Assembly: GCF_046119375.1 (NCBI RefSeq)
Contig: NW_027362763.1
Location: forward strand, 220,224,001 to 220,288,000
Source: Phyllobates terribilis
Lineage: Eukaryota
Length of the DNA stretch: 64,000 nucleotides
Reading direction: 5' to 3'
Shown: positions 7,706-51,300 of the stretch, piece after piece
How positions within the stretch are numbered: the stretch's first letter is position 1
Layout: every line of letters begins with the position of its first letter
Made by a program: the position numbers and the translations under genes
Notes under the pieces: model-generated
What the model was told of the DNA's origin: nothing
What the model saw: the letters and a program-made list of their open reading frames with translations, nothing else
Databases searched by the model: none

Positions 7706-7909
7706 AAAATTATTTTCCGGGCTAGATGCAGCTAAAAATTATTTTTAATTTTAAATCTGGTGGAGCTTATTATAGATGGCCTAATAGGATCAGTGCTGCA
7801 CACTGCTACAAAGCCCAAATTATTTTCCAGTCAAGATACAGATAAACATGATTAGTAATTTGAAAGCTTAAAACGGTTGGTAGGGTGATTTTAAACAATC
7901 ATCAAGCTT

Positions 7910-22513: not shown

Positions 22514-24822
22514 ATAAACAGATTGCTTAAGACGTGCATGACACCAGAAGACGCTAAGAGCTTGTATATGTGAAATAACGCAAAGTAATAGTGGAACAGC
22601 TACTGTAAGTATGTCGCGTATGCAAATCAGATGTTTATACAAAGACGGTACAAACCGAAGAAGCCATGTCTTTTTCACAAAATGTGCAAAATGTATTCTT
22701 TGTTTGGAGAGTTTAAAAAGCTTTTTCTTTGGCTAAATAAAGAAGTGAAAACGTTTTCACAATGCATCTACAAATTATCATTTTATTTAGGGAGCAAAAA
22801 CAGGTATGCTCAATGTTTTTAAAAATTAAGAAGTTACTGCTTCTCAACTAGTCATGAACAAATTATCAATATTTTCTGATCTGCAACAGGTTTGTTAATC
22901 TTAAAGTGAGTAAATAATTGCAAAAGCTTTTTATCAATTCTTCCAAAAAATAACTCTTTCTAAGGGAGCAGTAACAGGTTAGCTGTTTTCAAAGTATAGA
23001 AGTAATGGAACAACAAGTTTTTCAAAAACGTATCCCTATTTTGTGAGTTGTTTGATGCTTGAGTATAATCAATTGAGTATGTTTCACATCAGCTCTACAG
23101 TCTATCACTATAAAACAAAGTGTGCAGCCATGAGATGACTGGCTGCCATGACTGTGAAATGACAGTTTCAGCAAAAGAAGCCGCATGGTAGATAGATAGG
23201 AAGGAGCAGGCAATGAGATCACTTGCTTCAGAGTTTACTATAAATCGAGTAGATTTTACTACAGACAATCTTTTAGTTGCACATCACTTGCACTGTGTAT
23301 TGCTGGGGCCAAGACCCTGCTCCACTAATGATATTACCTCCTTGGCACCTCTTTGTCTGTTTCCTCAATCTTATCAACCACCCAAATCTTTATTGGCATC
23401 CCAGAAACAGATGATAGTTTCCTCTTTGGGAAACTGCATGAACTCCCTGCTTACCTGTCTGATTCTGACCTTGAATTTTGCTCTGACTAAGAGAGCCACT
23501 ACCACTGCAATTTCACTTACCACCATGACTCACAGAACCAGCAACTTAGCTTGCTGTTAGAATTGGATCATCCATCTCCTTCAGCACCCATTTCTTTCAG
23601 GTGCAAAATGTGACTAGTCACCTTTTCCAATAAACAAAAGTTGTTCTGTTTCATTATCTTTCTAAGCCCTGGAGTGCTGTGGGTTAGTGAACTAAGCAGT
23701 AGATCAGAAACAGGTATCATTGACGGAATAGAAATTCTACTGTGTACAACATTCAGTGCCGCGGTCCCCTAGGAATTGGGACAGGAAGGTCGGGCGAGAA
23801 GGTGTGGGTGTTTGTTGTGGCACAATTTCAGCTTGCCCACAGCCTCTGCATGCACCATCACTATCACCATCACGTCCAGTTCCCTGTCCCTTGAAACGCG
23901 CCTTGCCCATTTTAAATGGAGGACAATATCTTCCACGCTCAGTACAAATGTCTGAGTTTGGAGAGAACTTATACTGTATGTGATCCGTGTGATGGAGAAA
24001 CCACAGTTTTTAATACCTGGCCTGTAGTTAACTATTTTGAAAAGCAAACTGGTGTCCAAAACTTCGCTGACACACTGAAACAAATTTTTAATGGAGGCCA
24101 GAAATGTCAGTATTTTCTGAACACATTTATGTGATCCGTGTGATGGATAAGCCACAGTTTTAAATACCTGGCCTGTAGGTAACTACAGTATTTTGAGGAG
24201 CGGGGGTGCAATTTTGCCATCTTTACCTAGAGTGCCAACCTCCGTTGTCAGGCAGGGTACACTTTATAGCCTTTATCAAAGGGCCTGATTAGTTTGGATA
24301 GAGGTGTATAGACTTATCTATATATGTTCTGTATGTGTTTTTTGCACTATATCACTTGTTTTATGCTTAATCAATTTGCTCTGAGGACACTCAATGTCCA
24401 TTATTGCCAGTAGTGAGATTGTTATCTGTATTGATTGGACATAGCATTTGTTCCATGAGTTCTGATCTCACTATAAAAGCATGCTTAAGAATTGAGTGAC
24501 CAGATATGGCTTTTTGTGTCCTCTACGTTCAATATTTGTGTGTCAGTCCGTATCTTAAAATTATCTAATAAATAGTGTTGAGCGAGCATGCTCGACACTG
24601 CTCGGTACTCGCCCGAGCATCATGCTACTCGGGATGTTCGGCGAGCACCGAGCATTTCCGGGTTACTCGGGCGGGAGCTCAGGTCTCCGCCCTGCATGTT
24701 TGGCGCTCTTTACAGAGCCAATGAACATGCAGGGATTGCCAGCCAGTCACTGTAATGCCGCAGCCATGTTGGTTGTGGGCATTACATTGATTGGCTGGCC
24801 GCACAGCGTCACCTCGAGTATT

Positions 24823-26006
24823 TGTAACCGGGCGCCGCCATCTTGGACACAGACGGCCGGGATCAGACAGTGTAGGGACAGCGCTGCTGATTTAGGAAGA
24901 GATATATTGTTAGGGGGGCGGTTGCAGACAACTTTATTTAATGGAACACAACCGACCTCGGGGTCTGCAATGCAGCCTAGAGGACTGCTGCCGAACACTT
25001 TCCGGGTGGAAAGGCAAACGACAACTTAAATATTAAACCCTTCCATGTTAATTCACACAGGAACGGGTAAAGCGGTATGCTCTATCTCCGTTAACTGCAC
25101 GGAGGAAGAGAGCGACTGGCGACGCACCTAACAAATATCTTAACCCTTCGTGTTAAGGCACACGGAAGGGTAAGACGGTTCGCACAATCTCCAAGAACCG
25201 CAGGGAGACATGCGACCGTGGGAACAGCAGTAGCCCTGTCTTTGATACAGGCGCTATGCTATGGGGATTGGCGCTAAAGCGGTTCACACAATCTCCAAGA
25301 ACCGCAGGGAGATGTGTGACTGGACTAGGAGCAGTAGCCCTGTCTTCGACACAGGCGCTATGCTATAGGAGAAGGCGCTAGCGTGCGGGTGTGATTCCCG
25401 CCGGGTATTCGAGCCCTCAGCCGGCGAGCTACCGGACTGAGCCAACCCGCTCTATATAGCTCACAGGCGGCTCGGGGTGTAAGGCGAACCCACTGGTCAG
25501 AAGAAGTCTGCAAGGTGAAGCTACCTGCCTACTTAATCTGACCTGCCTAACTAAAGCTAAGGCTCTTAGAGGAGCCCAGAGAAAGCGTGCACACCACAAA
25601 CAGCTAGCTCAAATGATCTGAGCGTGTCGCCATCTTTGTGGGCGGGCCTTTTAAAGATTAAGCCCTGCCCACCGACGCGCTATTGGTGACGTTACCCGTG
25701 AACCAATCAGGCGGTGTCAGGTCACCGGGTCAGGTGGGTGCCAACCACCAATCATGATCCGCCAGGTCACGGACATGCTCAGTATGGCAAAACCTGGACT
25801 TAGATTCCACAAGCCCTGTCTCACTCTGCAACCCAGGCTTAACATTGCTAGGCACAACTACCTGGGAGACAAACAGGGCTTGCGGACCAGCTAGGTGTTG
25901 GAGCTGATGGCAATGCTGAGCAGCATCAGCCCTGGCTGGACTGAAATGGGAGTCCACAGAAGGCCCTGGACCGATTTTGAATCAAGCACCAGACCGACAC
26001 CTAACA
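24823..26006 (-). mobile_element. Probable solo LTR inserted in the 5' region of the hAT element
   Basis: TG...CA ends; flanks TATT / TATA (3 of 4); AATAAA on the minus strand ~110 bp from the left end; internal 104-bp tandem duplication (25183, 25287). Confidence 0.6.
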
Positions 26007-26269
26007 TATATACTGCAAAATAGTTAGTGTAGGGTCTGTAAAGTCTGCCAAATCAAACAAACAGTCCTTCTCAGGACTAATATCCATTCCAGATATCAGG
26101 CAGGCAGGCTGTATAGGAGACGCAGTGGTTATACCAGCAAACGCTGCACTACAGTCCTGGGTGCTACTGTTGCTGAAATTTCTGGACTTAGCTCCTGGTC
26201 TCAGGAGCCAGGAAAAATCCTTTTTTTTCATATAAATCCTCTTTTTTTTTTTTTTTCCTCATTCACACT

Positions 26270-29200
26270 GTACAAATAAACGTCTTATTAACATTTTGGT
26301 GTCCCCCCCCCCCCAAAAAAAAAGTGTGTCTGTGACAGTTCAGACACAAATATATCTTTTTAAAAGTGTCTGGTGTAGGCCAGAGAAATAGAAGTGTGGT
26401 TTTGCAGTTCCACGGTTCAAACCTCTGTATTATCCACTTTTGGGCCATTTTTACCTTAAAAAAAACAGATTGAGTGTGTCGCTCACTGTTCAGCTGCAAA
26501 TATATCTATTTAAAAAAGTCTGGTATACACCTGTAAATTATAACTGTGGTTTTGCCGTTCCACGGTAAAAAATCTCTATTATCCTGCTTTTGGCATTTAT
26601 GGCCATAAAAAAAAGCAGTAATAGTGTCTCCTGATTGCTCAAACACAAATATATCTGCTTAAATAGTCTGGTGTAGGCCAGAGAAATAGAAGTGTGGTTT
26701 TGCAGTTCCACGATTCAAACCTCTGTATTATCCACTTTTGGGCCATTTTTACCTAAAAAAAAACAGTTTGAGTGTGTCGCTCACTGTTCAACCGCAAATT
26801 TATCTATTTAAAAAAGTCTGGTATACACCAGTAAATTACAACTGTGGTTTTGCCGTTCCACGGTAAAAAATCTCTGTTATCCTGCTTTTGGCATTTTTTG
26901 CTGTAAAAAAAACTGTAATAGTGTCTCCTGATTGTTCAGACACAAATATATCTGTTTTAAAGAGACTGGTATACACCAGTAAATTATAACTGTGGTTTTG
27001 CCGTTCCACGGTCAAAAAACTATTATCCAGCTTTTGTTATTTTTTTCATAAAGAAAAACATTAATAGTGTCTCCTGATTGTTCAGACACAAATATATCTG
27101 TTTAAAAGAGTCTGGTGTAGGCCCGAGAAATAGAAGTGTAGTTTTGTAGTTCCACGGGTCACATCTCTGTATTATCCTGCTTTTGGCATTTTTTGCTGTA
27201 AAGAAAAACAGCAATAGTGTTTCCAGATTGTTCAGACACAAATATATCTGTTTATAAGAGTCTGGTATACACCAGTAAATTATAACTGTGGTTTTGCCGT
27301 TCCACGGTAAAAAAAACTCTATTATCCAGCTTTTGGCATTTTTTGCCGTAAAGAAAAACAGTAATAGTGTCTCCTGATTGTTCAGACACAAATATATCTG
27401 TTTTAAAGAGACTGGTGTACACCAGCAAATTACAACTGTGGTTTTGCCGTTCCACAGTAAAAAATCTCTATTATCCAGCTTTTGGTATTTTTTCCGTAAA
27501 GAAAAACAGTAATAGTGTCTCCTGATTGTTCAGACACAAATATATCTGTTTAAAAGAGTCTGGTGTAGGCCCGAGAAATAGAAGTGTGGTTTTGCAGTTC
27601 CACAGGTCAAATCTCTGTATTATCCTGCTTTTGGCAGTTTTTGCAGTAAAGAAAAACAGTAATAGTGTCTCCTGATTGTTGAGACACAAATATATCTGTT
27701 TAAAAAAGTCTGGTGTAGTCCTGAGTAATAGAAGTGTGGTTTTGCAGTTCCACAGGTCAAATCTCTGTATTATCCTGCTTTTGGCATTTTTTGCCATAAA
27801 AAAAAACAGTAATAGTCTCTCCTGATTGTTCAAACACAAATATATCTGTTTAAAAGAGTCTGGTGTAGGCCTGAGAAATAGAAGTGTGGTTTTGCAGTTC
27901 CACGGGTCAAATCTCTGTATTATCCTGCTTTTGGCATTTTCTGCCTTAAAGAAAAACAGTAATAGTGTCTCCTGATTGTTCAGACACAAATATATCTGTT
28001 TAAAAGAGTCTGGTGTAGGCCCGAGAAATAGAAGTGTGGTTTTGCAGTTCCACGGGTGAAATCTCTGTATTATCCTGCTTTTGGCATTTTTTGCCGTAAA
28101 GAAAAACAGTAATAGTGTCTCCCGATTGTTCAGACACAAATATATCTGTTGAAAAGAGTCTGGTGTCGGCCTGAGTAATAGAAGTGTGGTTTTGCAGTTC
28201 CACGGGTGAAATCTCTGTATTATCCTGCTTTTGGCATTTTTTGCCGTAAAGAAAAACAGTAGTAGTGTCTCCTGATTGTTCAGACACAAATATATCTGTT
28301 TAAAAGAGTCTGGTGTAAGCCCGAGAAATAGTAGTGTGGTTTTGCAGTTCCACGGGTCAAATCTCTGTGTTATCCTGCTTTTGGCATTTTTTGCCGTAAA
28401 GAAAAACAGTAATGCTGTCTCCTGATTGTTCAGACACAAATATATCTGTTTAAAAGAGTCTGGTGTAGGCCGAGAAAAAGAAGCGAGGTTTTGCAGTTCC
28501 ACTGGTCAAATCTCTGTATTATCCTGCTTTTGGCATTTTTTGCCGTAAAGATAAACAGTAATAGTGTCTCCTGATTGTTCAGACACAAATATATCTATTT
28601 TAAAGAGTCTGGTGTAGGCCAGAGAAATAGCAGTGTGGTTTTGCAGTTCCACGGGTCAAATCTCTGCATTATCCAGCTTTCGCCATTTTTTTGCCATAAA
28701 GAAAAACAGTAATAGTGTCTCCTGATTGTTCAGACACAAATATATCTGTTTAAAAGAGTCTGACTCTGGAATACACCAGTAAATTATAACTGTTGTTTTG
28801 CCGTTCCACAGTAAAAAAACTCTATCATCCAGCTTTTGGCATTTTTTGCCGTAAAGAAAAACAGTAATAGTGTCTCCTGATTGTTCAGACACAAATATAT
28901 CTGTTTAAAAGAGTCTGGTGTAGGCCCGAGAAACAGAATTGTGGTTTTGCAGTCCCACGGGTCAAATCTCTTTATTATCCTGCTTTTGGCATTTTTTGCC
29001 GTAAAGAAAAACAGTAATAGTGTCTCCTGATTGTTCAGACACAAATATATCTGTTTAAAAGAGTCTGGTGTGGGCCTAAGAAATAGAAGTGTGGTTTTGC
29101 AGTTCCACGGGTCAAATCTCTGTATTATCCTGCTTTTGTCATTTTTTGCCTTAAAGAAAAACAGTAATTGTGTCACCTGATTGTTAAGACACAAATATAT

Positions 29201-29270
29201 CTGTTTAAAAGATTCTGGTGTAGGTCAGAGAAAGAGAACTGTGGTTTTCCTCTTCCACGGTTCTAATCTA
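26270..29270. repeat. Tandem satellite, 150-bp unit, about 20 copies, two subtypes
   Basis: CAGACACAAATATATCTG recurs at 150-bp spacing (GACACA at 27983 and 28133). Confidence 0.95.
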
Positions 29271-29329
29271 CTTTTCATTACCCTTTTTCCATTGATAGTG
29301 CGAGTGTAAGCTAATTTACTTCATTTACA

Positions 29330-32300
29330 ATGGGCAAGGCGCTTATCAAGGGACATGGAACTGGGCTTTCTGGTGATGGTGCATGCAGAGGACGGGGCCG
29401 TGGCCAAGGTGAAAATGTGCCACAACCAACAGCCACATCTTCTCACTCCCAGTTCTTGACCAAATTACTAGGGAAGCACAGAACAACACCAGTATTGCGA
29501 CCTGATCAGTGTGAACAGGTTATTAATTGGATAGAAGATAATACTTCCAGTTACCTGGGCACCACCACCTCCGGTCTGCCTTCAACACGGTCAAATCTTA
29601 GTTGCCGTGAGTCTCGACCGCATACTCCTCCTCACCCTAATGCTCCTTCCCACCATGCCGAGTGTCATCAGACAGCAACTGATCCCACACTTGTACACTC
29701 TGAAGAGCAGTTCACTGGTCCATTTCCAGATTTTTGCCCCTCGCCTGCTCCGCTTGAAGTGGTGGAAGAGGAGATCCCATGTAGCGATGCCCAAAAATTT
29801 GAACAGCCACGGCCACAGGAAGTCGATGCTGGCAATTTGTCACAAGAGGTGGACGATGACGAGACACAATTTCCAGGAAGTGAGGAGGAGGATCGTGGTG
29901 CGCAAGTGGAAGAGGAGGAGGTGGTGGATGATCTAGTAACTGAACCAACGTGGCAGGAGGACATGCAGAGCGAGGCCAGCAGCACACAGGGTGAGGGAGG
30001 CAGAGTACCGAAACTGGCAGGAAGAAGCAGTGTGGTGGCCGCAGAAGGAAGGCGGGCAACCATTACCCGTAACACCAACATGAGGGACGTTGCCAGTACA
30101 AGCTGTAGGTCTTCCAGAGTCTCGAATTCTTTTAAAGACTCTGCTGATAACCCCAAAAAGGCCATTTGTACCACCTGCCATGCCAGCATCAGCAGGGGTG
30201 ACAAAACTACCAGCCTGACCACCACCAGCATGATCAGGCACATGGTAGCAAAGCACCCGACTTTGTGGGGCGAAACCCAGGGTGCACGACCAGTGTCAGC
30301 GGGTGTCACCACTGCTTCTTCCGCTGTTGTGCGTGCAATAGAACCCCCTTTTGTGTGTGCAAGGCAATCCCCTGTCCATACTGCATGCAAAGATGCCCCC
30401 TCCTCTCAGTCTTCACTTGTTATGGCAGTAAAGAAACAGCATCAACGTCCACGTCCACGTCCCACCGCAGCGTTCAATTGTCCATATCCCAGTCCTTTGA
30501 ACGAAAGCAGAAATTCGCAGCCAACGCCCCTCAGGCCACAGTCCTAAATTTGCATATTTCACGACTGCTTGCGTTGGAAATGCTGCCTTTTAGGCTGGTG
30601 GAGACGGAATCCTTCCGCAACCTTATGGCGGTGGCCATCCCTCGGTACTCGGTCCCCAGCCGACACTATTTTGCTCGGTGTGCCATCCCCGCACTACACA
30701 AGCACGTGTCCCAAAACATCTGCTGTGCCCTCAACAACGCAGTTACTGGGAGAGTCCACCTGACAACAGACACGTGGACAAGTGCTTGTGGCCAGGGACG
30801 GTACATCTCCCTGACGGCACACTGGGTAAACATAGTGGAAGTCGGGACCCAGTCGAACCTCGGGACGGAACACATCCACCCCACACCAAGGATTGCGGGC
30901 CCTATGTCAGTCAGAGTTGCCCCCACAGTGTACAGCTCCTGTGCATCATCCTCCTCCTCCTCCTCATGTTCAGCCTCCATCTCAGATATCACCACATCTG
31001 TTACAAGCTGGAAGCACTGCAGTACTGCCTCCGCCAAGCGGCAACAGGCTGTGCTGAAACTCATAAGCTTAGGTGATAAACCTCACACTGCTTCTGAGTT
31101 GTGGACAGCTGTGAAAAAGCAGGCAGATCTGTGGCTGAGACCGCTGAACCTACATCCAGGCATGGTCGTGTGTGACAATGGCCGTAACCATGTGGCGGCT
31201 CTGAGGCGAGGCGAGATCACACACGTACCATGCCTGGCTCATGTGCTTAACCTCGTGGTTCAGCGGTTTCTTAAATCGTACCCCGAGTTGCCAGATCTGC
31301 TCATCAATGTACGCCGCCTGTCAGCTCATTTTCGCAAGTCGGCTACAGCTTCCGCCGACCTTGCTGTGTTGCAGCAGCGTTTGCAGCTTCCGGCACACCG
31401 ACTGGTGTGTGATGTCCCCACACGTTGGAACTCTACCCTCCACATGTTGCTAAGGATTTGTGAGCAGAAGAGAGCAGTTGTGGAGTACCAGCTGCAACAA
31501 GGCCGTCGATATTCAGGTCAGACTCCACACATAAGACCTCCGGAGTGGACCTGGATGTCTGACATATGTACCATCTTGACAAACTTTGAGGAGTCCACCA
31601 AGATGGTGAGTGGTGATGACGCCATCATTAGCGTCAGCATTCCACTTGTCTGTCTTTTGCAATGCTCTCTGCAGAGAATTAAAGAGGAAGCATTGCAGCC
31701 CGAGCATGATGAGATGGATCAAGAAGGCGTAGCGGTCGACTACACACAGCCCAGCCTCATCTCATTCGAACGTGCATTGGGGGACAATGAGGGAGAGGAG
31801 GAGGAGGAGGAAGTACAGGAGCTGGTATCATGCGCTGTAGACGGTAGTACCTGTACAACTGTCATACCGTCGGTTCAGCGTGGGTGGCCTGAGGACAGGG
31901 GGTAGGAGGAGGAGGAGGAGGAGAGCAAGGTCAGTTGTCATCTTGGTGAGGACACGGAAGTCTTGCTCGTTACCAGTCTGGCACGCATGGCTGACTTTAT
32001 GTTACGCTGCCTTAACCGTGACCCTTGCGTTGTCAAAATGTTGGGTGACAGTCATTACTGGTTGGTGACACTTTTAGACCCACGATACAAGGAGAACTTT
32101 CACTCTCTTATTCCTGAGGTGGAGAGGTCTACAAAAATGGGGCAGTACCAGAAGGCCCTTGCTGTAGAACTGTTAAAAAAATTCCCATCTGAACATGCTA
32201 GCGGCAGAGGTCACAGTTCGTTGCCCAACCAAGGCGTACATGCGAGAGAGACGCAACCACAATCCAGCAAAGGCAGGAGAACACTGTCAATGTTCTGGGA

Positions 32301-32680
32301 CAGTTTTCTGAGACCCCCCCCAGCTTACAGGCCTTGAGGCGCGGGGCACTTTCACAAGGAGTGGAAAGTTTCAAAAGGTGGTGAGGGAGTACCTTGCCGA
32401 CCGTACCAGCATCCTCCGTGATTCCTCTGTGCCTTTTAATTTTTGGGTATCCAAGCTGGACATTTGGAATGAACTCGCTCTGTGCGCCTTGGAGGTCCTG
32501 GCCTGCCCTGCCGCAAGCGTGTTATCGGAGTGTGTTTTTAGTGTCGCTGGGGGAATTATAACTTATAAGCGCACTCGCCTGTCAACTGACAATGCTGACA
32601 AGCTGACCCTTATCAAAATGAACAAGGGCTTGATTGGGCCAGACTTCTCATCACCACCAAATGACAGCAGAGTAACATAA
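29330..32680 (+). pseudogene. hAT transposase pseudogene (BED, DDE, dimerisation domain); two frameshifts and one premature stop
   Basis: ORF pieces 29330-30547, 30265-31905, 31963-32337 and 32378-32680 carry CTTC..HMVAKH, LTTDTW, VCDNGRN, PCLAHVLNL, PTRWNS and SVLSECVFS; TAG at 31903 sits in a GAG run. Confidence 0.93.
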
Positions 32681-32854
32681 AGTCAAATCCACTGTGTTAT
32701 TTCGGGAGGTGTATTCACATGCACCGCTTCACACCCACACATGGGTATACGCTTCCTCATTTCGGCTGTTTTATGCTCTTCTCCTTATCCTCAGCCTCCA
32801 CCACCAGTATACCACCAGGGTGACCGTGGTCCATGTTGGCATTATTGCAAGTTC

Positions 32855-34450
32855 CTCCGTCCTTATTTTTGGCAGCTTTAGCTTGGAAGGCATAAGCAAA
32901 GACTATGGGAGACCCACTCCCCAATAATTGGAATAATGTTTGTAATATGCTGTACTGCATGGCTCTTGTAAGGGGCATTGCAAGTTCCTCCATACTAATT
33001 TTTGGTAGCTTTTGCTTGGAAGGCATAAGCAACGACTATGGGAGACCCACTCCCCAATAATGGGAATAATGTTTTTAAGATGCTGTACTGCATGGTTCAT
33101 GTAAGGGACATTGCAAGTTCCTCTGTACTATTTTTGGCAGCTTTTGCTTGGAAGGTATAAGCAAAGACTATGGGAGACCCACTCCTCAATAATGGGAATA
33201 ATGTTTTTAAGATGCTGTACTGCATGGCACTTGTAAGGGGCATTAAAACCGTCTTGTTAAGCTACTGCCACCTCCACCATTCTTCTAAGGGGCATTAAAA
33301 CCGTCTTGTTAAGCTACTGCGACCTCCACGTCTCTTCCAAGGGGCATTAAAACCGTCTTGTTAAGCTACTGCGACCTCCACGTCTCTTCCAAGGGGCATT
33401 AGAACCATCTTGTTAAGCTATTGCGACCTCCACCACTTTTACAAGGGGCATTAAAACCATCTTGTTAAGCTACTGTGACCTCCACCACTTTTCCAAGGGG
33501 CTTTAAAACCGTCTTGTTAAGCTACTGTGACCTCCACGTCTCTTCCAAGGGGCATTAAAATCATCTTGTTAAGCTACTGTGACCTCCACCAATTTTCCAA
33601 GGGGCTTTAAAACCGTCTTGTTAAGCTCCTGTGACCTCCACGTCTCTTCCAAGGGGCATTAAAACCATCTTGTTAAGCTTCTGCGACCTCCACATCTCTC
33701 CCAAGGGGCATTAAAACCATCTTGTTAAGCTACTGTGACCTCCACCACTTTTCCAAGGGGCATTAAAACAGTCTTGTTAAGCTGCTGTGACCTCCATGTC
33801 TCTTCCGAGGGGCATTAAAACAGTCTTGTTAAGTTACTGCGACCTCCACGTCTCATCCGAGGGGCATTAAAACCATCTTGTTAAGCTACTGCGACCTCCA
33901 CGTCTCTTCCAAGGGGAATTAAAAGCGCATTGTTAAACCACTCTGAACTCCACAGCTCTTCCAAGGGGCATTGAAATGTTGTTTTTAATTAACTCTAACC
34001 TCCACGACTCTTTGAACGGGCACTGCATTTCCTCCTAATTTTTGCCAGCTTTTGCTTCAAAGGCATAAGCAAAGACTATGGGAGACCCACTCCCCAATAA
34101 TGGGAATAATTTTTGTAATATGCTGCACTACATGGCTCTCGTAAGGGGCATTGCAAGTTCGTCCATCCTAATTTTTGGCAGCTTTTGCTTGGAAGGCATA
34201 AGCAAAGACTATGGGAGACCCACTCCCCAATAATGGGAATAATGTTTTTAAGATGCTGTACTGTATGGCTCTTATGAGAGGCATTAAAACTGTCTTGTTA
34301 AGCTACTGTGACCTCCACGTCTCTTCAAAGGGGCATTAAAAGCGTCTTGTTAAATCAATCTGTACTCCACAGCTCTTCCAATGGGCATTGAAATGTTGTT
34401 TTTAATTACCTCTAACCTCCACGACTCTTCCAACGGGCATTGAATTTCCT
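32855..34450. repeat. 3' tandem repeats of the hAT element: ~116-bp units interleaved with a 52-bp array (33236-33960, about 14 copies)
   Basis: CTATGGGAGACCCACTCCCCAATAATGGGAATAATG units; AAGGGGCATTAAAACCGTCTTGTTAAGCTACTGCGACCTCCACGTCTCTTCC units. Confidence 0.92.
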
Positions 34451-35840
34451 CCTAATTTTAGCCTTCCATTCACTGCTTAGGCCAACAGTGTACAGGAGAC
34501 CCAGTTGCTACATATGGAAAAAACGGTTTAGTTAATGCCCTCTGACCTCCATGTCACTTCCAAGGGGCTTTGGAGTGACTCTAAATTTTTGGTATTCATT
34601 GCAATCACTGTATGCCCTATAACTGTGTTGCTGAACCGCTCCTTTTGTTACAGAAAGATATCCTACAAGACATGTGTGGTTGACTGGCCTGATATTGATG
34701 AGAATGGTCCCTGTTCCTCCTGCTCTTTCTCCTTTGTCACCACCTCATCAATCATTTATCACCTGAAGCTTTGTTTTAACGGGAGTCATAGAATTGGGAT
34801 AGTAGCAGGAAAACATCCAGCAATCCTCGGAGGAGGTAGGATATGCGCCAAAACGCTGACCACCTCAGGCCTAGCTGCAACTACATACATGCACTTGCAT
34901 TCCAAGAAAACAAAGCAGATGCTAACTTCTATCATCATCATCATGCTCCTCACCTTGGCACTCTCAACTCCTCTGATGGAGAAGCCAGGGCCCACCGGAG
35001 GAGTCTGGTTCTCTGGTTAGCTCGTCCAATGCTGCCCTAAAGCAGGCCAGGCTAAGAAAAGTGTGGGGGAAGTTCCCAGGAGAAATAGGGGCGGCTGGGG
35101 ACTGTTTATGGACACCTGGCCGCCCCCAGGCGGCTGGGGACAGTGTGTGGGCACCAGGCCGCGGGGCGGCTGGGGACCGAGTATGGACACCCGGCCACCC
35201 CCTGGCTGCTGGGGACCGAGTGTGGACACCCGGCCGCCGGGCGACTGGGGACTGAGTTTGGATGCCAGGCCGCCGACGCAGCCATGACGTGGTGGCCAGA
35301 TTCCGCCTCCCCATGCCTAAAAGGCCCAATTTAAAGTGCAAGCAAGCAAGCAGTATGGTACTGCAGCCTGGGGGTGGGTGGGTGTCAAGCTGAATATTTG
35401 TGCTTGCATTGCAAGGAATGGGAGAGGTGCAATTGAACACTGCCCTGGGACAAGGACTTGAACGGGGATAGTTGCAAGTCTGCAGCGGCAGGTGCAGGGT
35501 GGGAGGCATCTTCGCATGTGCTATGAACAGTGGGTTGGCATGCACACACTACAGCGGAATAGGCTGTCCTTCCCACTAAATGCACTGGGGAGGGCACAGG
35601 CAATGTTTTGGTATGAGCGCTTAATCTTATGTATAAGGCGCGCCGGGACAAATATGGGCGGCTGGGGACCGAGTATGGATACCTCGCTGCCGAAGCAGCC
35701 ATGAGGTAGTGGCCAGCTTCAGCCTCCTCCAAACTAAAAGGCCCCATTTCAAGTGCAAGCTAGCAGTATGGCATTGCAGCCTAGGGGTGGGTGGGTGGCA
35801 GGCTACACACTTACGCTTGCATTCCAAGAAAACAAAGCAG

Positions 35841-36209
35841 ATGCTAACTTCTATCATCATCATCATGCTCCTCACCATGGCACTCTCAACTCCCCTGATG
35901 GAGAAGCCAGGGCCCACTAGAGGAGTCAGGTTCTCTGGTGGGCTTGTCCAATGCTGCCCTAAAGGAGGCCTGGCTAAGAAAAGTGTGTGGGAAGGTGACA
36001 GGAGAAATAGGGGCGGCTGGGGACCGTTTATGGACACCCGGCCACCTCCAGGAGGCTGGGGACCGTGTGTGGACACCCGGCTGTGGGGCGGCTGGGGACC
36101 GAGTATGGACACCCAGCCTCTCCCTGGGGGTAGGGGACTGAGCGTGGACATCCGGCCGCCGGGCGGCTGGGGACTGAGTATGGATACCTCGCTGCCGAAG
36201 CAGCCATGA
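35841..36209 (+). CDS. Hypothetical 122-aa ORF, signal-peptide-like N terminus plus GGWGP repeats (copy 2)
   Basis: MLTSIIIIMLLTMALS-TP followed by GGWGP(F/S/C)xDT repeats; no evidence of expression. Confidence 0.3.
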   Translation: MLTSIIIIMLLTMALSTPLMEKPGPTRGVRFSGGLVQCCPKGGLAKKSVWEGDRRNRGGWGPFMDTRPPPGGWGPCVDTRLWGGWGPSMDTQPLPGGRGLSVDIRPPGGWGLSMDTSLPKQP

Positions 36210-36341
36210 GGTAGTGGCCAGCTTCGGCCTCCTCCAAACTAAAAGGCCCCATTTCAAGTGCAAGATAGCAGTATGGCATTGCAGCCTGGGGGTGGGTGGC
36301 AGGCTTCACACTTACGCTTGCATGCCAAGAAAACAAGGCAG

Positions 36342-36710
36342 ATGCTAACTTCTATTATCATCATCATGCTCCTCACCTTGGCACTCTCAGCTCCCCTGAT
36401 GGAGAAGCCAGGGCCCACCAGAGGAGTCTGGTTTTCTGGTGAGCTTGTCCAATGCTGCCCTAAAGCAGGCCAGGCTAAGAAAAGTGTGTGGGAAGGTGGC
36501 TGGAGAAATAGGGGCGGCTGGGGACCGTTTATGGACACCAGGCCGCCCTCAGGAGGCTGGGGCCCGTGTGTGGACACCCGGCTGCGGGGCAGCTGGGGAC
36601 CGAGTATGGACACCCAGCCTCCCCATGGGGGCAGGGGACCGAGCGTGGACATCTGGCCGCCGGGCGGCTGGGGACTGAGTATGGATACCTCGCTGTGTAA
36701 GCAGCCATGA
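36342..36710 (+). CDS. Hypothetical 122-aa ORF, signal-peptide-like N terminus plus GGWGP repeats (copy 3)
   Basis: MLTSIIIIMLLTLALS-AP...; same length as copy 2, 16 amino-acid differences by hand count; no evidence of expression. Confidence 0.3.
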   Translation: MLTSIIIIMLLTLALSAPLMEKPGPTRGVWFSGELVQCCPKAGQAKKSVWEGGWRNRGGWGPFMDTRPPSGGWGPCVDTRLRGSWGPSMDTQPPHGGRGPSVDIWPPGGWGLSMDTSLCKQP

Positions 36711-37616
36711 GGTAGTGGCCAGCTTCGGCCTCCTCCAAACTAAAAGGCCCAATTTCAAGTGCAAGCTAGCAGTATGGTATCGCAGCCTGCGGGTAGGTGG
36801 GTGGTAGGCTGCATATTTGCGCTTGCATTGCAAGGAATGGGCGAGGTACAATTGAACACTGCCCTGGGACAAGGACTTGCACGGGGATAGTTGCAAGTCT
36901 GCATCTTCTGATGCGCAAGGATCACTTCTGATGGGCACACTTTTAGGCAGTGACCTTGGTATCAGAGATGCTTCCAGGGGTCTTCCCCATGCTGTTCCCA
37001 TGTCTTTTCAGCACTGTATGCATGTGTCACACAGCACATGGCCAGATAAAGTTGTAAAATGTTAAAATTACATTTCCCGGTGAATGCATTTGTCACGGTT
37101 GAAAGCAATACAAAAGTGCAAAAACGCAAAAGAAATGCTACTTGTGAACCTAGCCCAAGGTGTAGAGGAGTATTTTTGTTTTTGGTTATTTATTTTACCT
37201 TATACACACGTCTTTACCCTGGAAAGGAAATTCCTTAACATATTTCACAGGAAAACCGTTTCAGTTTCGTTTTTGAACGTTTTATTGTGAGCCCGTAAAA
37301 GTGGCTTAATATCTCTGACCACATTGTTGACAGCAGTGACCTGGAGGTCATAAATGCTTCCTGGGGCGATCCCCATGCTGTCCCCATGTCTTTTGAGCAC
37401 TGTCACTATCGTTTTGGGCACATTTTAGGCTTTTTACAGACTGCCGGGGGTGCCGCCACAAAAATGCTCGGGTCTCCCATAGACTAACATTGGGCTCGTT
37501 GCTCGGGTCGAGCATCCGAGTATCACGGTGAGCTCGGCCCAAGATTCGAGCACCCGAGCATTTTAGTGCTCACTCAACACTACTAATATAGTATAGATTT
37601 TTTATTTTTTGAGGGT

Positions 37617-40498
37617 TCATGTTAACCTCATTTTAGAAAGTCAACTACAGCTTCCACTGCCTTTGCCGTGTTTCAGCAGCGTTTGCAGCTTCCGGCTCAC
37701 AGACTGGTGTGTGATGTCCCCACGTGTTGGAACTCTACACTACAGATGTTGGGAAGGATTCGTGAGCAGAAGAGGGCCGTTGTTGAGTACCAGCATCAAC
37801 AAGGCCATCGGTATTCAGTTCAGACTCCACACATAAGACCTACCTCAGAAATGAACATGGATGTCAGACATATGTACCATCCTCCACCAAGATGGTGAGC
37901 GGCGATGAAGCCATAATTAGCGTCACCATCCCTCTTCTCTGTCTCCTGAAATGCTCTCTGCTCACAATCAAAGAGGATGCATTGCAGGCGGAGCATAATG
38001 AGATGGAGCAAAGAACCATACAGGGTGATTACACACAGCCCAGCCTTATCTCATCCCAACGTGGATTGGGTGACACGAGGAAGAGGAGGAGGAGGAAGAA
38101 CATGAGCTAGTTTCATGTGCTATAGACGGTACTACCTGCACAACTGTCATACCGTCTGTTCAGCGTGGATGGTCTGAGGACAGAGAGTAGGAGGAGGAGA
38201 GCATGGTCAGTCGTCCTCTTGGTGAGGACATGGAAGTCTTGCCTGTTAGCAGTCTGGTACACATGGCTGAGTTTATGTTACGCTGCCTTTCCCATGACCC
38301 TCGCGTTCTCAAAATTTGGGTGACAGTCATTACTGGTTGGTGACACTTCTAGACCCACGCTATAAGGAGAACTGTATATCTCTTATTCCTGAGGAGGATA
38401 GGTCTACAAAAATGGGGCAATGGGGCAGTACCAGAAGGCCCTTGTTGCAGAAATATTAAAAAAATTCCCATCTGAAAACGCTGGCGACAGAGGTCACAGT
38501 TCGTTGGACAACCAAGGACTACAGGCGAGAGAGACACAACTCCAATCCAGCAGAGGCAGGGGAACACAATCAAATTTCTGGGTGAATTTTCTCAGCCCCT
38601 CCCATCGCATAGCACCTGAGGTGTGGGGTACTCATACAAGGAGTGTAAAGTTTGGGAAGATTCTGAGGGAGTACCTTGCCGACCGTACCAACATCCTCCG
38701 TGATTCCTCTGTGCCTTATAATTATTGGGTATCCAAGCTGGATACGTTGAATGAACTCGCTCGCTACGCCTTGGAGGTCCTGGCCTGCCCTGCCGCTAGC
38801 ATTTTATCAGAGCAGGTTTTTAGTGCCGCTGCTGGAATTATAACTGATAAGCGCATCTTCCTGTCAACTGAAAATGCTGACAGGCTAACTCTTATAAAAA
38901 TGAGCAAGGGCTGGATTGGGCAAGACTTCTGAACACCACCGAATGATAGCAGGGTAACATAAACTCAAATCCAGTGTCTTTTTTTGGGAGGTGTATTCCC
39001 ATGCACCTTTTCACACCCACACATGGGTATACGCTTCCTGATTTTGGCTATTTTCTCTTGTCCTCCTCCGTCTACTCATCCTCATCCTCTACCACCATTG
39101 TCACCAGGGTGACCGTGGTCCGTGATGCAATACCCACATAATTTTTTTAAAGGATGGTTATGATGCCCGTAAAAAAAAAAAATTCATACAGTATGTTCAT
39201 GTATATCCCCCAGGGGTAAATGTTTGTCAGCCCATACACTTAGTGCATTGGCATTACAAGTATAGGAGACCCGCTTATTTCTATTGGGAACATTTATTTA
39301 GCAGCCCTTGCATTCACTGCATAGGCAAACACTATGGGAGACCCACTTCCTAATAATTGGAACATTGTTTTCAGGAGGCCCTCTGACTTCCACGTCTCTT
39401 CCAAGGCGCATTGAAGGGCCTCCAAATTTTTGGTAACCCTTGCATTCACTGCATAGGCTAACACAATGTGAGACCCACTTCCTGATAATGGGAACATTGT
39501 TTTCAGGAGGCCCTCCTCTACGTCTCTTCCATGGGGCATTGGAGTAGGTCCAAATTTTTGGCAGCCCTTGCATTCACTGCATTGGCAAACAGTATGGGAG
39601 ACCCACTTCCTAATAATGGGAACATTGTTTTCAGGAGGCCCTCCTCTAAGTCTCTTCAAAGGGGTATTGGGGTGCGTCCAAATTTTCAAAGGGGTATTAG
39701 GGTGCGTTCAAATTTTTTGGAAGCCCTGCCACTGACTGCATACGCAATAACAGCATAGGAGACCCACTCTTTAGTAATGGGAACAACAAAGCATAGCCGG
39801 CTTATGGATCACTAAGAATAGTGAGGGCCGACTGCTGGCCCTTTAAGTATAGTAAAGGCCACGTGATGGCCCTATAAAAATAGTCTTTGTGACTTTCAGA
39901 GTCCCTCCTTCATAAAAGAAACAGGATGTGTCTTATCATGTCTCACACACCACATGGCCAGATAAGGTTGTAAAATGTTAAAATGACATTTCCCGGTGAA
40001 TGCATTTGTCACAGTTAAAAGCAATACAAAAGTGCAAAAATGCAACAAAAACTCTATGTGTGAACATAGCCTATGGTGTGGAGGAGTATTTTTGCTTTTG
40101 GTTATTTATTTTGCCTTATATACAAGTGATTACCCTGGAAATGATGTTCCTTAACATATTTCCCAAGAAAATACATTTTGGTTTAGTTTTTGTATGTTTT
40201 TGTGAGTCCATAAAAGTGGCGTAATACCTCTGACAACATTGTTGACAGCAGTGACCTGGAAGTCAGAAATGCTTCCAGGGGTCTTCCCCATGCTGTTCCC
40301 ATTCCATTTGAGCACTGTTCCCATCGATTTGGGCAATTTTTAGGCCCTCTGCAGACGGCCGTGGGAAGCCGCCTGAAAAATGCTCCAGTTTCCCATAGAC
40401 TTACATTGGGCTCGTTGCTCAGGTCGAGCACAAGAGTATTCCAATGTGCTCGACCCGAGCAACGAGCACCCAAGCATTTTAGTGCTCTCCCATCACTA
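37617..40498 (+). mobile_element. 5'-truncated hAT element: C-terminal transposase remnant (~37640-38960), ~118-bp repeats (39295-39785) and right end
   Basis: RLVCDVPTCWNS, ALEVLACPAASILSEQVFS; right end ..CCCATCACTA at 40498; last ~550 bp parallel 36950-37582. Confidence 0.88.
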
Positions 40499-48310: not shown

Positions 48311-51300
48311 TAGTGATGAGTGAGCGTGCTTGCAACTGCTCTGTACTCGCCCGAACATCTCACTGCTCTTGATGCTTGGCACTCGGTGAATACTTCCAGG
48401 TTGCTCCGATGGGAGCTTGGGTCTCTGCTCCCCATGTTTGGCGCTCTTTTGACAGAGAATAAACATGCGGGGATTGCCTGCCACTCACTGTAATGCCATG
48501 TTGGTTGTGGCATTAAAGTGATTGGCTGGCCGCATAGCATCATCGGGTCTATATAAGACCTGGTGCCGCTATGCTCGTCACAGTCTACCCCGGAAACCGG
48601 CAAAGTAGAGAGAGGTGCTGCTGAGTGAGGGAGAGAATTGGTGGTTTATTAGTTAGATAGGGGTAATCCACAGCAAGATATATATCCATCTGAACTAGCA
48701 GTCCTTCTAAGGACTAATCCAGCTGCATATATTACTGGTGATAGTAGAAGTTAGGCAGGCAGCTGGTGGACAATGTATACAGCAGAATAGAGTCCATTGC
48801 ACGTTCTATCTGCTGCTGTTACAGATATCTATAGCCCTAGATTTTGGGGCTATTTTTTTTTGCTTTTAATCCTGATTATTTGCTTAAAAAGCAATACAGT
48901 ACACCATTTTATTGCTCCAATTTCTTGTTAGAAGAATACAGACAGATTTTTTTTATTTTATTCGCATTGCTGTATTGTGGAAGCAGAGAAACGTATCCAT
49001 CAGATGGGATCAGATATTACTGCGCTAATAATCAAGACATTTTTGGGAGCTTGCCAGATATTGCACTCCATTTAAAGTCTGGCAGTTGAGTGTTGTTCAA
49101 ACCTATTTACTCTTGGTCACTGACCAATATCATACTAATAGGCTACTGCCTAAAACCGTTGTCATCACACGTGATCCCATATTACTGTAGTAATAATACA
49201 GACATTTATGTGAGCATGCCAAATATTATACTCCATTTAAAATGGAGTGGCAATGGAAGTGGTCGTGGATGTGATGGTGATGGTGCACGCAGAAGTCGAG
49301 GCCATGGGCAAGATGAAACTGTGCCTTCTGAGGGAGCACAACAAACACCCACATCATGTCGAACTACCTTCCTGTCCCAATTACTAGGGGGCCACAGAAC
49401 ACCACTCTTGAAGCCAGAGCAGTGTGAAAAGGTTGTTGGTTGGATAGCAGATAATGCTTACAGTCAGTTTGAAACCACCACCACCCTGTCTTCCACATGG
49501 TCCAGTCTCAGTAGCCGTGTGTCTGGACCACATATTCCTCACCCTGATCCTCCTTCCTCCTAGCATTCCAAGTGCCTGGAGACAACTGATCCCACACTTG
49601 GATACTTCAAAGAGCTATTCACTTTTTCATTTATAGATTCGGGCCTCTCGCCCTGCCCCCTTCAAATGGAGCAAGAGGAGATCGCATGATTTGAGCAGCC
49701 ATGGTGACATGAAGGTGATGGTGGGAAAGTGAAATTAATGTTGCAAGAGGTGGATGATGAGACACAATTTCCCCCAAGTCAGGAGGAGGCCCAGGGTGCG
49801 TACATGGAAGACGATGTGGTGGATGATGAAGTCACTGACAAAACATAGCAAGGTGACATGCATAGCAAGGACAGAAGCACAGAGGGTGAGGGAGGCGTAA
49901 CACTACAACAGGCAGGAACAAGCAGTGGGATGGCCACAGACTTAAGGTGGATAATTGTTCCATAGAAGATCAACACAAGGGAAGTTGCCAGTCCAATTGT
50001 TAGGTCTTCCTGAGTCTGGCTCTTTTTTAAAGACTGTCCCGATAACCCCAAAAATGCCATTTGCAACCTCTGCCATGCCAGCATCAGCATGGCAGCAAAA
50101 CTACCAGCCTGACCACCACCAGCATGCTCAGGCACATGAAACAAAAGCACCAGACTAGTTGAGCCGAACGCCAGGTCCAGAAACAGTGTCTGCGGGTGTC
50201 ACACTGCCTGTTCCACTGTTGTGCCTGCACGCCAATCCCCTGTCCATGGTGCAGGCGAAGATGCCTCCCTCCCTGCACCTGTCGTTGCATACATGCAACC
50301 ACCACCATCAGCAACCACGTCCACATCCTTTTCCCAGTGCAGTGTTCAGTTGTTCCTACCCCAGTCCATTGAGCAAGTGCACATACGCAGCCAACGCCCT
50401 ACAGGCCACACTACTAAACTCCCACATTTCTCAAATGCTTGCAATTGAAATGTTGCCATTCTGGTTCAAGGAGACTGAATTTTTCCACAACCTCATGGCG
50501 ACGGCCATCCCTCGGTACCTGGTCCCCAGCCGCCACTATTTCTCTCGGTGTACCATCCTCGCCTTACACAAGCACGTGTCCCTGAACATTACCTGTGCCC
50601 ACAACAACGCAGTTACTGGGAAGGTCCACCAAACCACGGGCACATGGAAAAGTGCTTGGGCCAGGAATGGCACATCTCACTGATGTTACACTGGGTTAAT
50701 ATAGTGGAAGCCAGGACCCAGTCGGACCCTGGGAGGGAATACGTCCTCCCGACAGCTAGCATTGCAGGCCCTGGGTCAATCAGGGTTGTCCCTACATTCT
50801 GCAGCTCCTGCGTTTCCTCCTCCTCCTCAGTCTCCATCTCCGAAATGACCACATCAATCGGAAGCTGGAAACACTGCCACACTTCCTCGGCCAAGTGGCA
50901 ACAGGCTGTGCTGAAGCTCATATGCTTAGATGACAAAGCGCACACCGCTGCAGAGTGGTTGACAGCTGCAAAAGAGCAGGCACATCTGTGGTACTCATTG
51001 CTGAACATACAACCAGGCATGGTCGTGTGTGACAATGGCGGGAACCTGGTGGCGGCTCTGAAGCTAGGCAAGCTCACACATGTACCATGCCTGGCTCATG
51101 TTTTCAACCTAGTGGTTCAGTGGTTTCTCAAAACCTACTCGGAATCTGAATGAACTGCTTGTCAAAGTATGCTACATGTGTGCCCATTTTCGAAAGTCAC
51201 CTACAGCTTCTGCCGCTCTCGCCATGCTTCAGCAGCATTTCCAGCTTCCTGCTCACTGACTGGTGTGCAATGTCACCACGCATTAGAACTCAACATTGCA

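What the first reader, a model, noticed from the sequence alone, without database searches (positions are those of the whole stretch)
34590..36920. Built-in antisense module: scrambled, amplified reverse-complement pieces of hAT transposase in the element's own 3' region
Seen: read on minus, this block is a patchwork of non-contiguous transposase segments. They include post-BED VVCACQPTVH..CEDAS, SVQL..QCKHKY, LALEMGPF..LMA..YSVPSR, HILPPPRIAG and an EEQ acidic linker. They are rejoined out of order, then amplified as a ~501-bp unit and a YSVPSR-derived minisatellite. The 17-mer TACTCGGTCCCCAGCCG matches this element's own ORF (~30647-30663) exactly; flanking identity looks only about 65-70%, so the donor is a diverged relative. 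A read-through transcript would hold sense and antisense copies. Inference: a self-limiting or anti-competitor RNA system (hairpin siRNA or piRNA trigger) carried by the transposon. I know of no description of this architecture, but could not search.
Basis: partly seen in the sequence, partly recalled or inferred. Interest (0 to 1): 0.82.

Follow-up and report, generated by a model that had tools for sequence, protein, structure and literature searches.

The report
Reversed transposase scraps inside a frog transposon
A dead 13-kb hAT "jumping gene" in a poison-frog genome carries, behind its own gene, a tandemly amplified patchwork of backwards fragments from a related transposase; many copies in the genome share it, but it looks like inherited repair filler, and nothing yet shows it acts as an RNA silencer.

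Summary
Window 34629-36946 lies inside a TIR/TSD-bounded hAT copy (24573-37582). On its minus strand it carries DNA-level homologs of the transposase gene. All the named pieces are there, along with a 501-505-bp tandem unit, a 36/39/75-nt YSVPSR-derived minisatellite, and the exact 17-mer (three copies in the block, one in the ORF). Two corrections are needed. First, the fragments are colinear with the transposase and separated by two internal deletions; the "scrambling" comes mostly from tandem duplication. Second, the patch also holds a ~200-bp piece of unknown origin and shuffled duplicates of the element's own 3' subterminal DNA.

The block is not private to this copy. Public DNA runs of this species and of a related species hold it at depths comparable to the transposase gene, and they include a single-unit variant. 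It also appears in contigs from an RNA library.

The proposed function is not supported. Complementarity to the element's own ORF is only 65-74%. No exact match exceeds 17 nt. Thirteen ATTAAA signals lie between the stop codon and the block. The RNA/DNA depth ratio across the block is unremarkable. Related inverted-duplication silencers are already described (Mu killer, Ac composite insertions).

My best reading is ancient template-switch filler in a progenitor element, inherited by its descendants. An earlier scan note (s1-241531) reports the same architecture elsewhere in this genome.

The parts
24573..37582 (+). Host hAT element (copy 1), 13.0 kb. 5' TIR at 24573-24588, 3' TIR at 37567-37582, TSD at 24565-24572 and 37583-37590.
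   Evidence: TIR motif search; sequence views; TIR 15/16 and TSD 7/8.
29330..32680 (+). Frameshifted transposase pseudogene in four ORF pieces, with zf-BED and hAT dimerisation domains.
   Evidence: profile positions 14-898 matched in three frames; 91% identical to a Phyllobates terribilis protein.
30335..30761 (+). Sense segment of the element's own ORF (post-BED region through YSVPSR and beyond) that the block mirrors. Further small mirrored segments lie at 30871-30900 and about 31636-31794.
32844..34628 (+). The element's normal 3' minisatellites (133-bp and 52-bp units). Each 52-bp unit carries an ATTAAA hexamer.
   Evidence: shared with copy 2.
34629..34884 (-). Left part of the block: reversed transposase fragments matching profile 562-607 (34666-34812; the IPLL...acidic EEQ stretch) and profile 305-327 (34816-34884; HILPPPRIAG).
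34881..35087 (.). The 'a-part': about 200 bp of unknown origin inside each unit (other copies at 35803-36009 and 36304-36510). No homology to any hAT sequence in the window.
35088..35275 (-). YSVPSR-derived minisatellite (36/39/75-nt periods). Sister arrays lie at 36010-36188 and 36511-36689. The 17-mer occurs at 35167, 35659 and 36089.
35241..35567 (-). U1 core: a reversed, colinear copy of ORF nt 30335-30670 (VVCACQPTVH..CEDAS, SVQL..KHKY, LAL.IGPF...VPSR).
35561..35762 (-). Segment X: a reversed copy of ORF nt 30567-30761 (LALEMGPF..YSVPSRPY..QNIACAL) with no minisatellite expansion. It starts the tandem array.
35656..36946 (-). Tandem array of the unit, period 501-505 bp (U2 35803-36303, U3 36304-36946). 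Absent from the single-unit variant seen in reads (joint 35518>36916).
36925..37020 (+). Right-hand filler: shuffled duplicates of the element's own 3' subterminal DNA. 36931-36946 resembles 37415-37429. 36947-37017 duplicates 37333-37403 at 83%.
37021..37582 (+). Normal 3' subterminal region and TIR, colinear with copy 2 (39937-40498, 83.9%).
37627..40498 (+). Copy 2: a 5'-truncated relative (about 82-84% identical) that lacks the block. It has about 150 bp of unrelated sequence (39786-39936) where copy 1 has 34629-37020.

Best explanation
The block is filler DNA that a progenitor of this hAT subfamily acquired once, and every descendant copy then inherited it.

Inferred origin: during repair of a double-strand break or gap in the element's 3' non-coding region, DNA synthesis switched templates. 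It copied, in reverse orientation, an already internally deleted stretch of a diverged hAT transposase gene (profile positions about 150-256, 305-327 and 562-607). It also copied about 200 bp of unknown DNA and short out-of-order pieces of the element's own 3' subterminal region. This patch replaced about 150 bp of the original sequence.

Shown: slippage or unequal exchange then expanded a 36-75-nt minisatellite at the YSVPSR-coding site and a unit of about 503 bp. This element is prone to such arrays; it also carries 150-, 133-, 128- and 52-bp arrays.

Inferred consequence: the rearranged element kept its ends and stayed mobile, so the patch hitch-hiked to high copy number and into related species. 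It most likely has no function of its own. Any antisense RNA it yields would pair only imperfectly with this family's mRNA.
For: Location and boundaries:
- The block sits inside a TIR/TSD-bounded element.
- No TIR-like motif lies at the block's edges; all five TIR hits in the window are element ends.
- The left edge is in the middle of a repeat unit. The right edge is flanked by shuffled duplicates of the element's own 3' DNA.
- The related copy 2 lacks the block and has different DNA there.

Nature of the fragments:
- They are colinear with internal deletions, and they match in all reading frames, so they are decaying DNA and not a selected ORF.
- One component has no hAT homology.
- CpG observed/expected is 0.40, like the rest of the element.
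- There are no Rfam or Pfam hits.

Family-wide inheritance:
- Summed word depth across the block in a DNA run is 0.4-0.9 M, against 1.15-1.5 M for the transposase C-terminal part.
- The non-transposase a-part is equally deep.
- A single-unit variant (joint 35518>36916 with CGC between) is present in organisms A and B.

Weak pairing potential:
- The longest exact complement is 17 nt.
- Identity is 65-74%.
- Predicted helices are 11 bp or less.

Precedent: filler DNA and rearranged derivatives are documented for hAT elements Ac/Ds (PMC3260210).
Against: - The block-bearing form is the majority form of a very abundant family and persists in a related species. That is also what a useful module would look like.
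- The amplified part is exactly the most conserved coding motif. It gives 23/24-nt matches to another hAT lineage in the window, which would suit mismatch-tolerant piRNA targeting.
- Three of four checkable family-majority bases move the block closer to the ORF antisense, so consensus-level complementarity is higher than in this decayed copy.
- Block sequence is present in RNA-library contigs.
- Junction microhomologies, the usual signature of template switching, could not be shown in this decayed copy.
Confidence: 0.62

Rival explanations
1. Nested insertion. A short, internally deleted non-autonomous relative of this hAT inserted in reverse orientation into the 3' region of the progenitor. 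It later lost its ends through deletion and decay, then underwent tandem duplication. On this reading too, the block is functionally neutral.
For: On the minus strand the fragments are colinear and look like a classic internal-deletion derivative (profile 154-256, 305-327, 562-607). hAT copies are densely packed and adjacent to one another in this window.
Against: No TIR-like motif or TSD lies at or near the block's edges. The reversed fragment has no 5' or 3' non-coding hAT sequence. The right edge consists of shuffled pieces of the host element's own 3' DNA, and one internal piece has no hAT homology. These features fit a template-switch patchwork better.
Confidence: 0.2
2. Functional antisense module. 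Read-through or antisense transcription of the block gives RNA complementary to the post-BED/YSVPSR segment of hAT transposase mRNAs. That RNA feeds siRNA or piRNA production and represses either the element itself or, more plausibly, a rival hAT lineage.
For: The block is family-wide and shared with a related species, and it is present in RNA-library contigs. The amplified part is the most conserved motif; it gives a 17-nt exact match to the own ORF, present three times in the block, and 23/24-nt matches to copy 3. Thermodynamically the two segments would pair: cofold gain is -105 kcal/mol against -26 for shuffles. Inverted transposase duplications do trigger silencing in maize. An earlier scan note reports the same layout in three other copies (unchecked).
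Against: Identity to the own ORF is 65-74%, with no perfect match of 18 nt or more. Predicted helices are 11 bp or less in U1. Thirteen ATTAAA signals precede the block. The RNA/DNA depth ratio of the block (about 3e-4) is no higher than that of the ORF or the flanks. Contigs carry no strand information, and an RNA library can contain DNA. No target family with high complementarity was found in the window. A self-limiting module should not mark the most successful lineage. High copy number is explained by descent alone.
Confidence: 0.12
3. The plus strand of the units encodes new peptides (ORFs of 150-166 aa with GGWGP repeats), as another first-stage note suggested.
For: Plus-strand ORFs span almost a whole unit: 35709-36209 and 36258-36710. 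The stop at 35018-35020 is private to this copy, because the family majority has G at both 35018 and 35019.
Against: Long ORFs occur on both strands and in several frames of this GC-rich repeat. There is no Pfam hit. Word-index searches with two other block ORFs (one per strand) found no homolog among 5.8 billion proteins. The exhaustive search with the 166-aa plus-strand ORF found only a chance match to an unrelated 25-aa-repeat protein. The sequence is demonstrably decayed antisense transposase DNA.
Confidence: 0.03
4. A private rearrangement or an assembly artefact of this one locus.
For: The three other hAT copies in the window lack it.
Against: Hundreds of thousands of contigs from independent runs and samples, including another species, cover the block at 80-99% identity. 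They cover its non-transposase parts as well, and they include variant forms of it.
Confidence: 0.02

Closest known systems
Filler DNA / abortive-gap-repair derivatives of hAT elements (maize Ac/Ds; Ds-like elements with filler DNA, PMC3260210)
   Same: It belongs to the hAT superfamily. An internal segment is replaced by a patchwork that includes transposase-gene fragments and unrelated DNA. The termini are retained, so the rearranged element stays mobilisable. The insert has no TIR or TSD of its own.
   Different: Here the transposase fragments are reversed and come from a diverged lineage, not the element itself. They sit beside a full-length transposase gene rather than replacing it. They were then amplified into a ~503-bp tandem array plus a minisatellite. 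The rearranged form became the abundant form of the family in a vertebrate.
Mu killer (maize; partial inverted duplication of mudrA, PMC3440606)
   Same: A rearranged DNA-transposon derivative that holds transposase sequence in inverted orientation, so that one transcript could carry both sense and antisense.
   Different: Mu killer is a single, immobile locus with near-identical arms that give a ~4-kb hairpin, siRNAs and demonstrated heritable silencing. Here the arms are 65-74% alike and 4.5-5.3 kb apart. The structure is carried by many mobile copies, and neither small RNAs nor silencing are shown.
Ac composite insertions with inverted fractured Ac fragments (bioRxiv 10.1101/2020.01.07.897926)
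   Same: A hAT element with inverted fragments of its own coding region, generated by aberrant transposition or replication. These are proposed as general initiators of silencing.
   Different: Those are recent, identical-sequence inverted duplications at one locus, and they produce dsRNA and 21-24-nt siRNAs experimentally. This block is old and diverged, derives from a heterologous donor, and is inherited family-wide.
Animal piRNA clusters holding antisense transposon fragments (from my own knowledge, not checked here)
   Same: Decayed, antisense-oriented TE fragments that could give mismatch-tolerant guides against related active elements.
   Different: piRNA clusters are host loci defined by small-RNA output and chromatin. 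Here the fragments ride inside a transposon, and no small-RNA evidence exists.

Membership tests
hAT superfamily transposon (host element) | 8-bp target-site duplication flanking short terminal inverted repeats | tested here: met
   TSD CTAATAAA/CTAATATA (7/8); TIRs 15/16 identical. A second copy (48311-51968) has the same TIR type and TSD ATCAGTAC/ATCAGAAC.
hAT superfamily transposon (host element) | Transposase with a BED zinc finger and a C-terminal hAT dimerisation domain | tested here: met
   PF02892 E 1.2e-6 and PF05699 E 1.5e-8. A frog hAT profile matched over positions 14-898. The gene is frameshifted in this copy.
Filler-DNA / template-switch repair patch inside a cut-and-paste transposon | The insert lacks its own TIRs and TSD | tested here: met
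   No TIR-like motif at or near 34629 or 37020.
Filler-DNA / template-switch repair patch inside a cut-and-paste transposon | Patchwork of short segments from several templates, some inverted, some from the element's own nearby sequence | tested here: met
   Reversed transposase pieces with two internal deletions; a piece of unknown origin; shuffled duplicates of the element's own 3' subterminal DNA.
Filler-DNA / template-switch repair patch inside a cut-and-paste transposon | Microhomology at the junctions | tested here: inconclusive
   Only a ~16-20-nt similarity at the unit junction (34881-34909 against 35390-35418) was seen by eye. The primary junctions are too decayed in this copy, and other copies could not be fetched.
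Inverted-duplication hairpin silencer (Mu killer / Ac composite-insertion type) | Transposase sequence present in inverted orientation relative to a sense copy | tested here: met
Inverted-duplication hairpin silencer (Mu killer / Ac composite-insertion type) | Near-identical arms able to form long perfect dsRNA | tested here: not met
   65-74% identity; longest exact match 17 nt; predicted helices of 11 bp or less in U1.
Inverted-duplication hairpin silencer (Mu killer / Ac composite-insertion type) | A single transcript spanning both arms | tested here: inconclusive
   Block sequence occurs in contigs of an RNA library, but without strand, continuity or enrichment. Thirteen ATTAAA hexamers lie between the stop codon and the block.
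Inverted-duplication hairpin silencer (Mu killer / Ac composite-insertion type) | Small RNAs from the arms and trans-silencing of the active element | not testable with these tools
   No small-RNA run could be laid. The single read-laying run was used on DNA and RNA contig sets.

The most novel reading that the evidence does not exclude
A highly successful mobile hAT family carries an amplified antisense cassette as a heritable part of its 3' region. The cassette is directed at the most conserved post-BED/YSVPSR coding segment of rival hAT lineages. Its transcripts would be fed into the host piRNA/siRNA machinery to suppress competitors while sparing the carrier, whose own ORF is too diverged to be hit. 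This would be transposon-versus-transposon RNA warfare.
Probability: 0.08. Interest if true: 0.85.

Novelty: new variant of a known kind. Interest (0 to 1): 0.36.

Why it matters
If the patch is neutral filler, it is still a clean vertebrate example of two things: how repair-generated patchworks become fixed in a transposon lineage and are then copied many times, and how tandem arrays grow inside giant frog hAT elements. It would also serve as a diagnostic marker for tracing this subfamily across dendrobatid frogs.

If it instead produces small RNAs, it would be the first mobile, family-wide antisense cassette in a DNA transposon. It would make competition between transposon lineages through the host silencing pathway directly testable.

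Tried and rejected
1. Fetching other genomic copies from frog assemblies via close transposase homologs. No DNA was served because the files are too large.
2. Finding other copies through proteins predicted from block ORFs. The minus-strand 193-aa ORF and the plus-strand 161-aa ORF gave no hits. The exhaustive search with the plus-strand 166-aa ORF gave one hit to a 2316-aa protein with 25-aa GGYGSVMDSR repeats on a 201-kb contig of an unrelated assembly. I judged this a chance low-complexity match.
3. A metagenome scan with a 19-mer shared by all units. It returned three GC-rich contigs with no other similarity to the element, so these were chance hits.
4. Rfam at a permissive threshold over 32600-37700. 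Nothing was found.
5. Homology of the ~200-bp a-part to the transposase region it would replace, to segment X, and to the whole ORF. None was convincing: local-alignment scores against the three candidate segments lay within the shuffle range, and the minus strand against the whole ORF scored just above all 100 shuffles (27 versus a mean of 20.8) with no convincing alignment. blastn also found no matching sequence in the window outside the block's own unit copies.
6. Looking for the same architecture in the other hAT copies of the window. There were no ORF-to-flank inverted matches in copy 0 or copy 3.
7. Assigning the donor subfamily by blastx. The best hits were only 42-61% identical over 38-104 aa, or 78% over 23 aa, to several frog lineages, which is too short and decayed to resolve.
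8. A first duplex-energy script timed out. It was rerun with fewer shuffles.
Full report
**Context.** The window is transposon-rich DNA from a dendrobatid poison frog. The best protein matches to the transposase here are annotated genes of Phyllobates terribilis (91% identity) and Anomaloglossus, Ranitomeya and Dendrobates (48-73%). hAT elements make up about 4% of a related genome (PMC11152451). A profile built from 32 frog hAT transposases finds four hAT copies in the window:
- Copy 0, minus strand, 7574-10918, with a contiguous ORF match.
- Copy 1, plus strand, 29909-32668.
- Copy 2, plus strand, 37629-38950, 5'-truncated.
- Copy 3, plus strand, 49789-51793.

**The host element.** A TIR motif taken from the 3' end of copy 2 occurs only five times in the window. 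These pair up as the ends of copy 1 (24573 and 37582) and copy 3 (48311 and 51968), plus the 3' end of copy 2. Copy 1 has TIRs identical at 15 of 16 positions and an 8-bp target-site duplication, CTAATAAA/CTAATATA. It is therefore a 13.0-kb element. Its transposase gene (29330-32680) has zf-BED and hAT dimerisation domains but is broken into four ORFs. The finding's block lies inside this element, between the normal 3' minisatellites (133-bp and 52-bp units, 32844-34628) and the normal 3' subterminal region (37021-37582). Both of these are shared with copy 2.

**Check of the observation.** blastn of the block against the window gives only reverse-strand matches, and only to hAT coding DNA:
- 35281-35557 matches 30629-30345 at 65.4%.
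- 35571-35760 matches 30751-30567 at 66%.
- 36804-36883 matches 30525-30446 at 73.8%.
- 35415-35567 matches copy 3 at 72.7%.

tblastx finds the same correspondence in every frame, so this is nucleotide homology of a decaying sequence and not a conserved protein. Against the frog hAT profile, the minus strand matches positions 154-248, 216-256, 159-216 and 562-607 with whole-window E-values from 2e-9 to 3e-4. It matches 305-327 weakly, and blastx supports that last piece with 78% over 23 aa, E 4e-7. The ~501-bp unit is real: 35656-36332 versus 36161-36837 is 92% identical with a period of 501-505, and U1 34881-35484 versus 36304-36903 is 87.6%. So is the YSVPSR-derived minisatellite with periods of 36, 39 and 75 nt. 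The 17-mer occurs three times in the block and once in the ORF, and nothing longer matches exactly.

**Corrections to the anatomy.** Read on the minus strand from 35567 down to 34666, the pieces run in transposase order: profile 154-256, then the expanded minisatellite, then about 200 bp with no detectable homology to any hAT sequence, then 305-327, then 562-607. That is a colinear fragment with two internal deletions. The out-of-order look comes from the tandem array to its right, which starts with a cleaner copy of ORF nt 30567-30761 (35762-35561). The real left edge is about 34629, in the middle of a 128/133-bp repeat unit. On the right, the patch continues with a 16-nt copy of 37415-37429 (36931-36946) and an 83% duplicate of 37333-37403 (36947-37017), in swapped order. 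Colinearity with copy 2 resumes at 37021. Copy 2 has about 150 bp of unrelated DNA at this place. There is no TIR-like motif at either edge of the patch.

**Is it private to this copy?** No. I laid contigs of four public runs on 31700-37650 at 80% likeness or better.
- In a DNA run of the same species, the summed word depth is 0.4-0.9 M across most of the block, against 1.15-1.5 M over the transposase C-terminal part and 1.0-2.0 M over the 3' end.
- The left part (34486-34883) and the a-part, neither of which any hAT ORF in this window resembles at 80% or more, are as deep as the transposase-derived parts. So the depth is not a spill-over from hAT genes.
- At many block positions almost all contigs carry a base different from this copy (for example 34701, 35311, 35361). 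The window therefore holds one decayed member of a large family.
- A joint 35518>36916 with CGC between, seen in the same-species runs and in a run of a second species, shows that a single-unit form with the same right-hand junction exists.
- In the second species the block's depth (3-14 k in most bins) is similar to that of the transposase (4-16 k).
- Depth sums are not copy numbers, and the contigs are short, so long-range structure in other copies is not shown.
- An earlier first-stage note (s1-241531, unchecked) reports inverted transposase pieces downstream of the ORF in three other copies of a hAT family in this genome. That agrees with the depth evidence.

**Is it an RNA module?** The geometry would allow one transcript to hold both sense and antisense, and predicted pairing is well above shuffles. 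duplexfold gives -313 against -193±10 kcal/mol. The cofold gain is -105 against -26 kcal/mol. The evidence against a silencing role is as follows:
- The duplex is riddled with mismatches. The longest uninterrupted helix is 11 bp in U1, and the longest exact match anywhere is 17 nt. That is short of what Dicer products need.
- No AATAAA lies between the stop codon and the block, but 13 ATTAAA hexamers do, one per 52-bp unit.
- In the RNA library, block depth divided by DNA depth is about 3e-4. That is the same order as the ORF (about 5e-4) and below the 3' end and minisatellites (about 1e-3). This is what background transcription of many dispersed copies, or some DNA carry-over, would give.
- Contigs carry no strand information.
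- CpG observed/expected is 0.40, like the rest of the element.
- Rfam and Pfam find nothing.

Points that keep the idea alive:
- The amplified part is the most conserved coding motif and gives 23/24-nt matches to copy 3.
- Three of four checkable family-majority bases bring the block closer to the ORF antisense. Complementarity at the time of amplification was therefore higher, perhaps around 75-80% by my own rough correction for the ~83% identity between copies.
- The block-bearing form is the successful one.

**Best explanation.** A single old repair event with template switching in the progenitor element copied a reversed, already deleted piece of a diverged hAT gene, together with unrelated DNA and scraps of the element's own 3' end. 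Tandem expansion followed, and the patch was then passively inherited by all descendants. The patchwork, the lack of termini and the family-wide distribution are shown. The template-switch mechanism and the neutrality are inferred. A nested reversed insertion that later lost its ends is the main alternative for the origin. A small-RNA function is the main alternative for the consequence.

**Comparison with known systems.** Filler DNA and transposase-fragment-bearing derivatives are described for maize Ac/Ds (PMC3260210). Inverted transposase duplications that give hairpin RNA and heritable silencing are known as Mu killer (PMC3440606) and as Ac composite insertions (bioRxiv 10.1101/2020.01.07.897926). 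The present case differs in four ways: it is heterologous, old and diverged; it is tandemly amplified; it sits next to a full-length gene; and it is carried by a mobile, abundant vertebrate family. It fails the defining feature of the hairpin silencers, which is near-identical arms. I therefore do not file it as one of them.

**Verdict.** The structure is real and family-wide, and it is a variant of a known kind of transposon rearrangement. The proposed function is unproven and, on present evidence, unlikely (about 0.1). The interest is moderate.

Noticed in passing
window 37583-40498: A 5'-truncated second copy of the same hAT family starts only 45 bp after the 3' TIR of copy 1, entering at transposase profile position ~461. 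It is 82-84% identical to copy 1 and has its own 3' TIR at 40482-40498.
   Followed up: partly
window 48311-51968: Third hAT copy, from a diverged subfamily, with TSD ATCAGTAC/ATCAGAAC. The transposase match stops at profile position ~669 and the 3' TIR follows within about 200 bp, so this is an internal-deletion derivative lacking the C-terminal domain.
   Followed up: partly
window 7574-10918 (minus strand): hAT copy 0 gives one contiguous single-frame profile match (positions 15-896, E 4e-296), so its transposase ORF looks intact.
   Followed up: partly
window 27000-29410: About 16 tandem copies of a 150-bp unit fill the 5' non-coding region of copy 1 right up to the start of the transposase ORF. 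Together with the 133-, 128- and 52-bp arrays, this shows the family is unusually prone to internal tandem arrays.
   Followed up: no
window 33242-34335: Every 52-bp unit of the 3' minisatellite carries an ATTAAA hexamer (13 in all). There is no AATAAA anywhere between the transposase stop codon and the element's end. The array may act as a repeated polyadenylation site.
   Followed up: no
window 23755-23910 (minus strand): An isolated fragment 55% identical (54 aa) to the first 52 residues of copy 1's N-terminal ORF lies about 660 bp outside the 5' TIR. It is a remnant of yet another hAT copy.
   Followed up: no
window 60001-64000: Strong strand asymmetry (GC skew 0.33-0.41, AT skew 0.14-0.16) at the end of the window. 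The cause was not examined.
   Followed up: no
window 40410-40467 and 37494-37514: The 3' subterminal region of this hAT family contains a ~58-nt palindrome just inside the TIR (82.8% self-complementary in copy 2).
   Followed up: no
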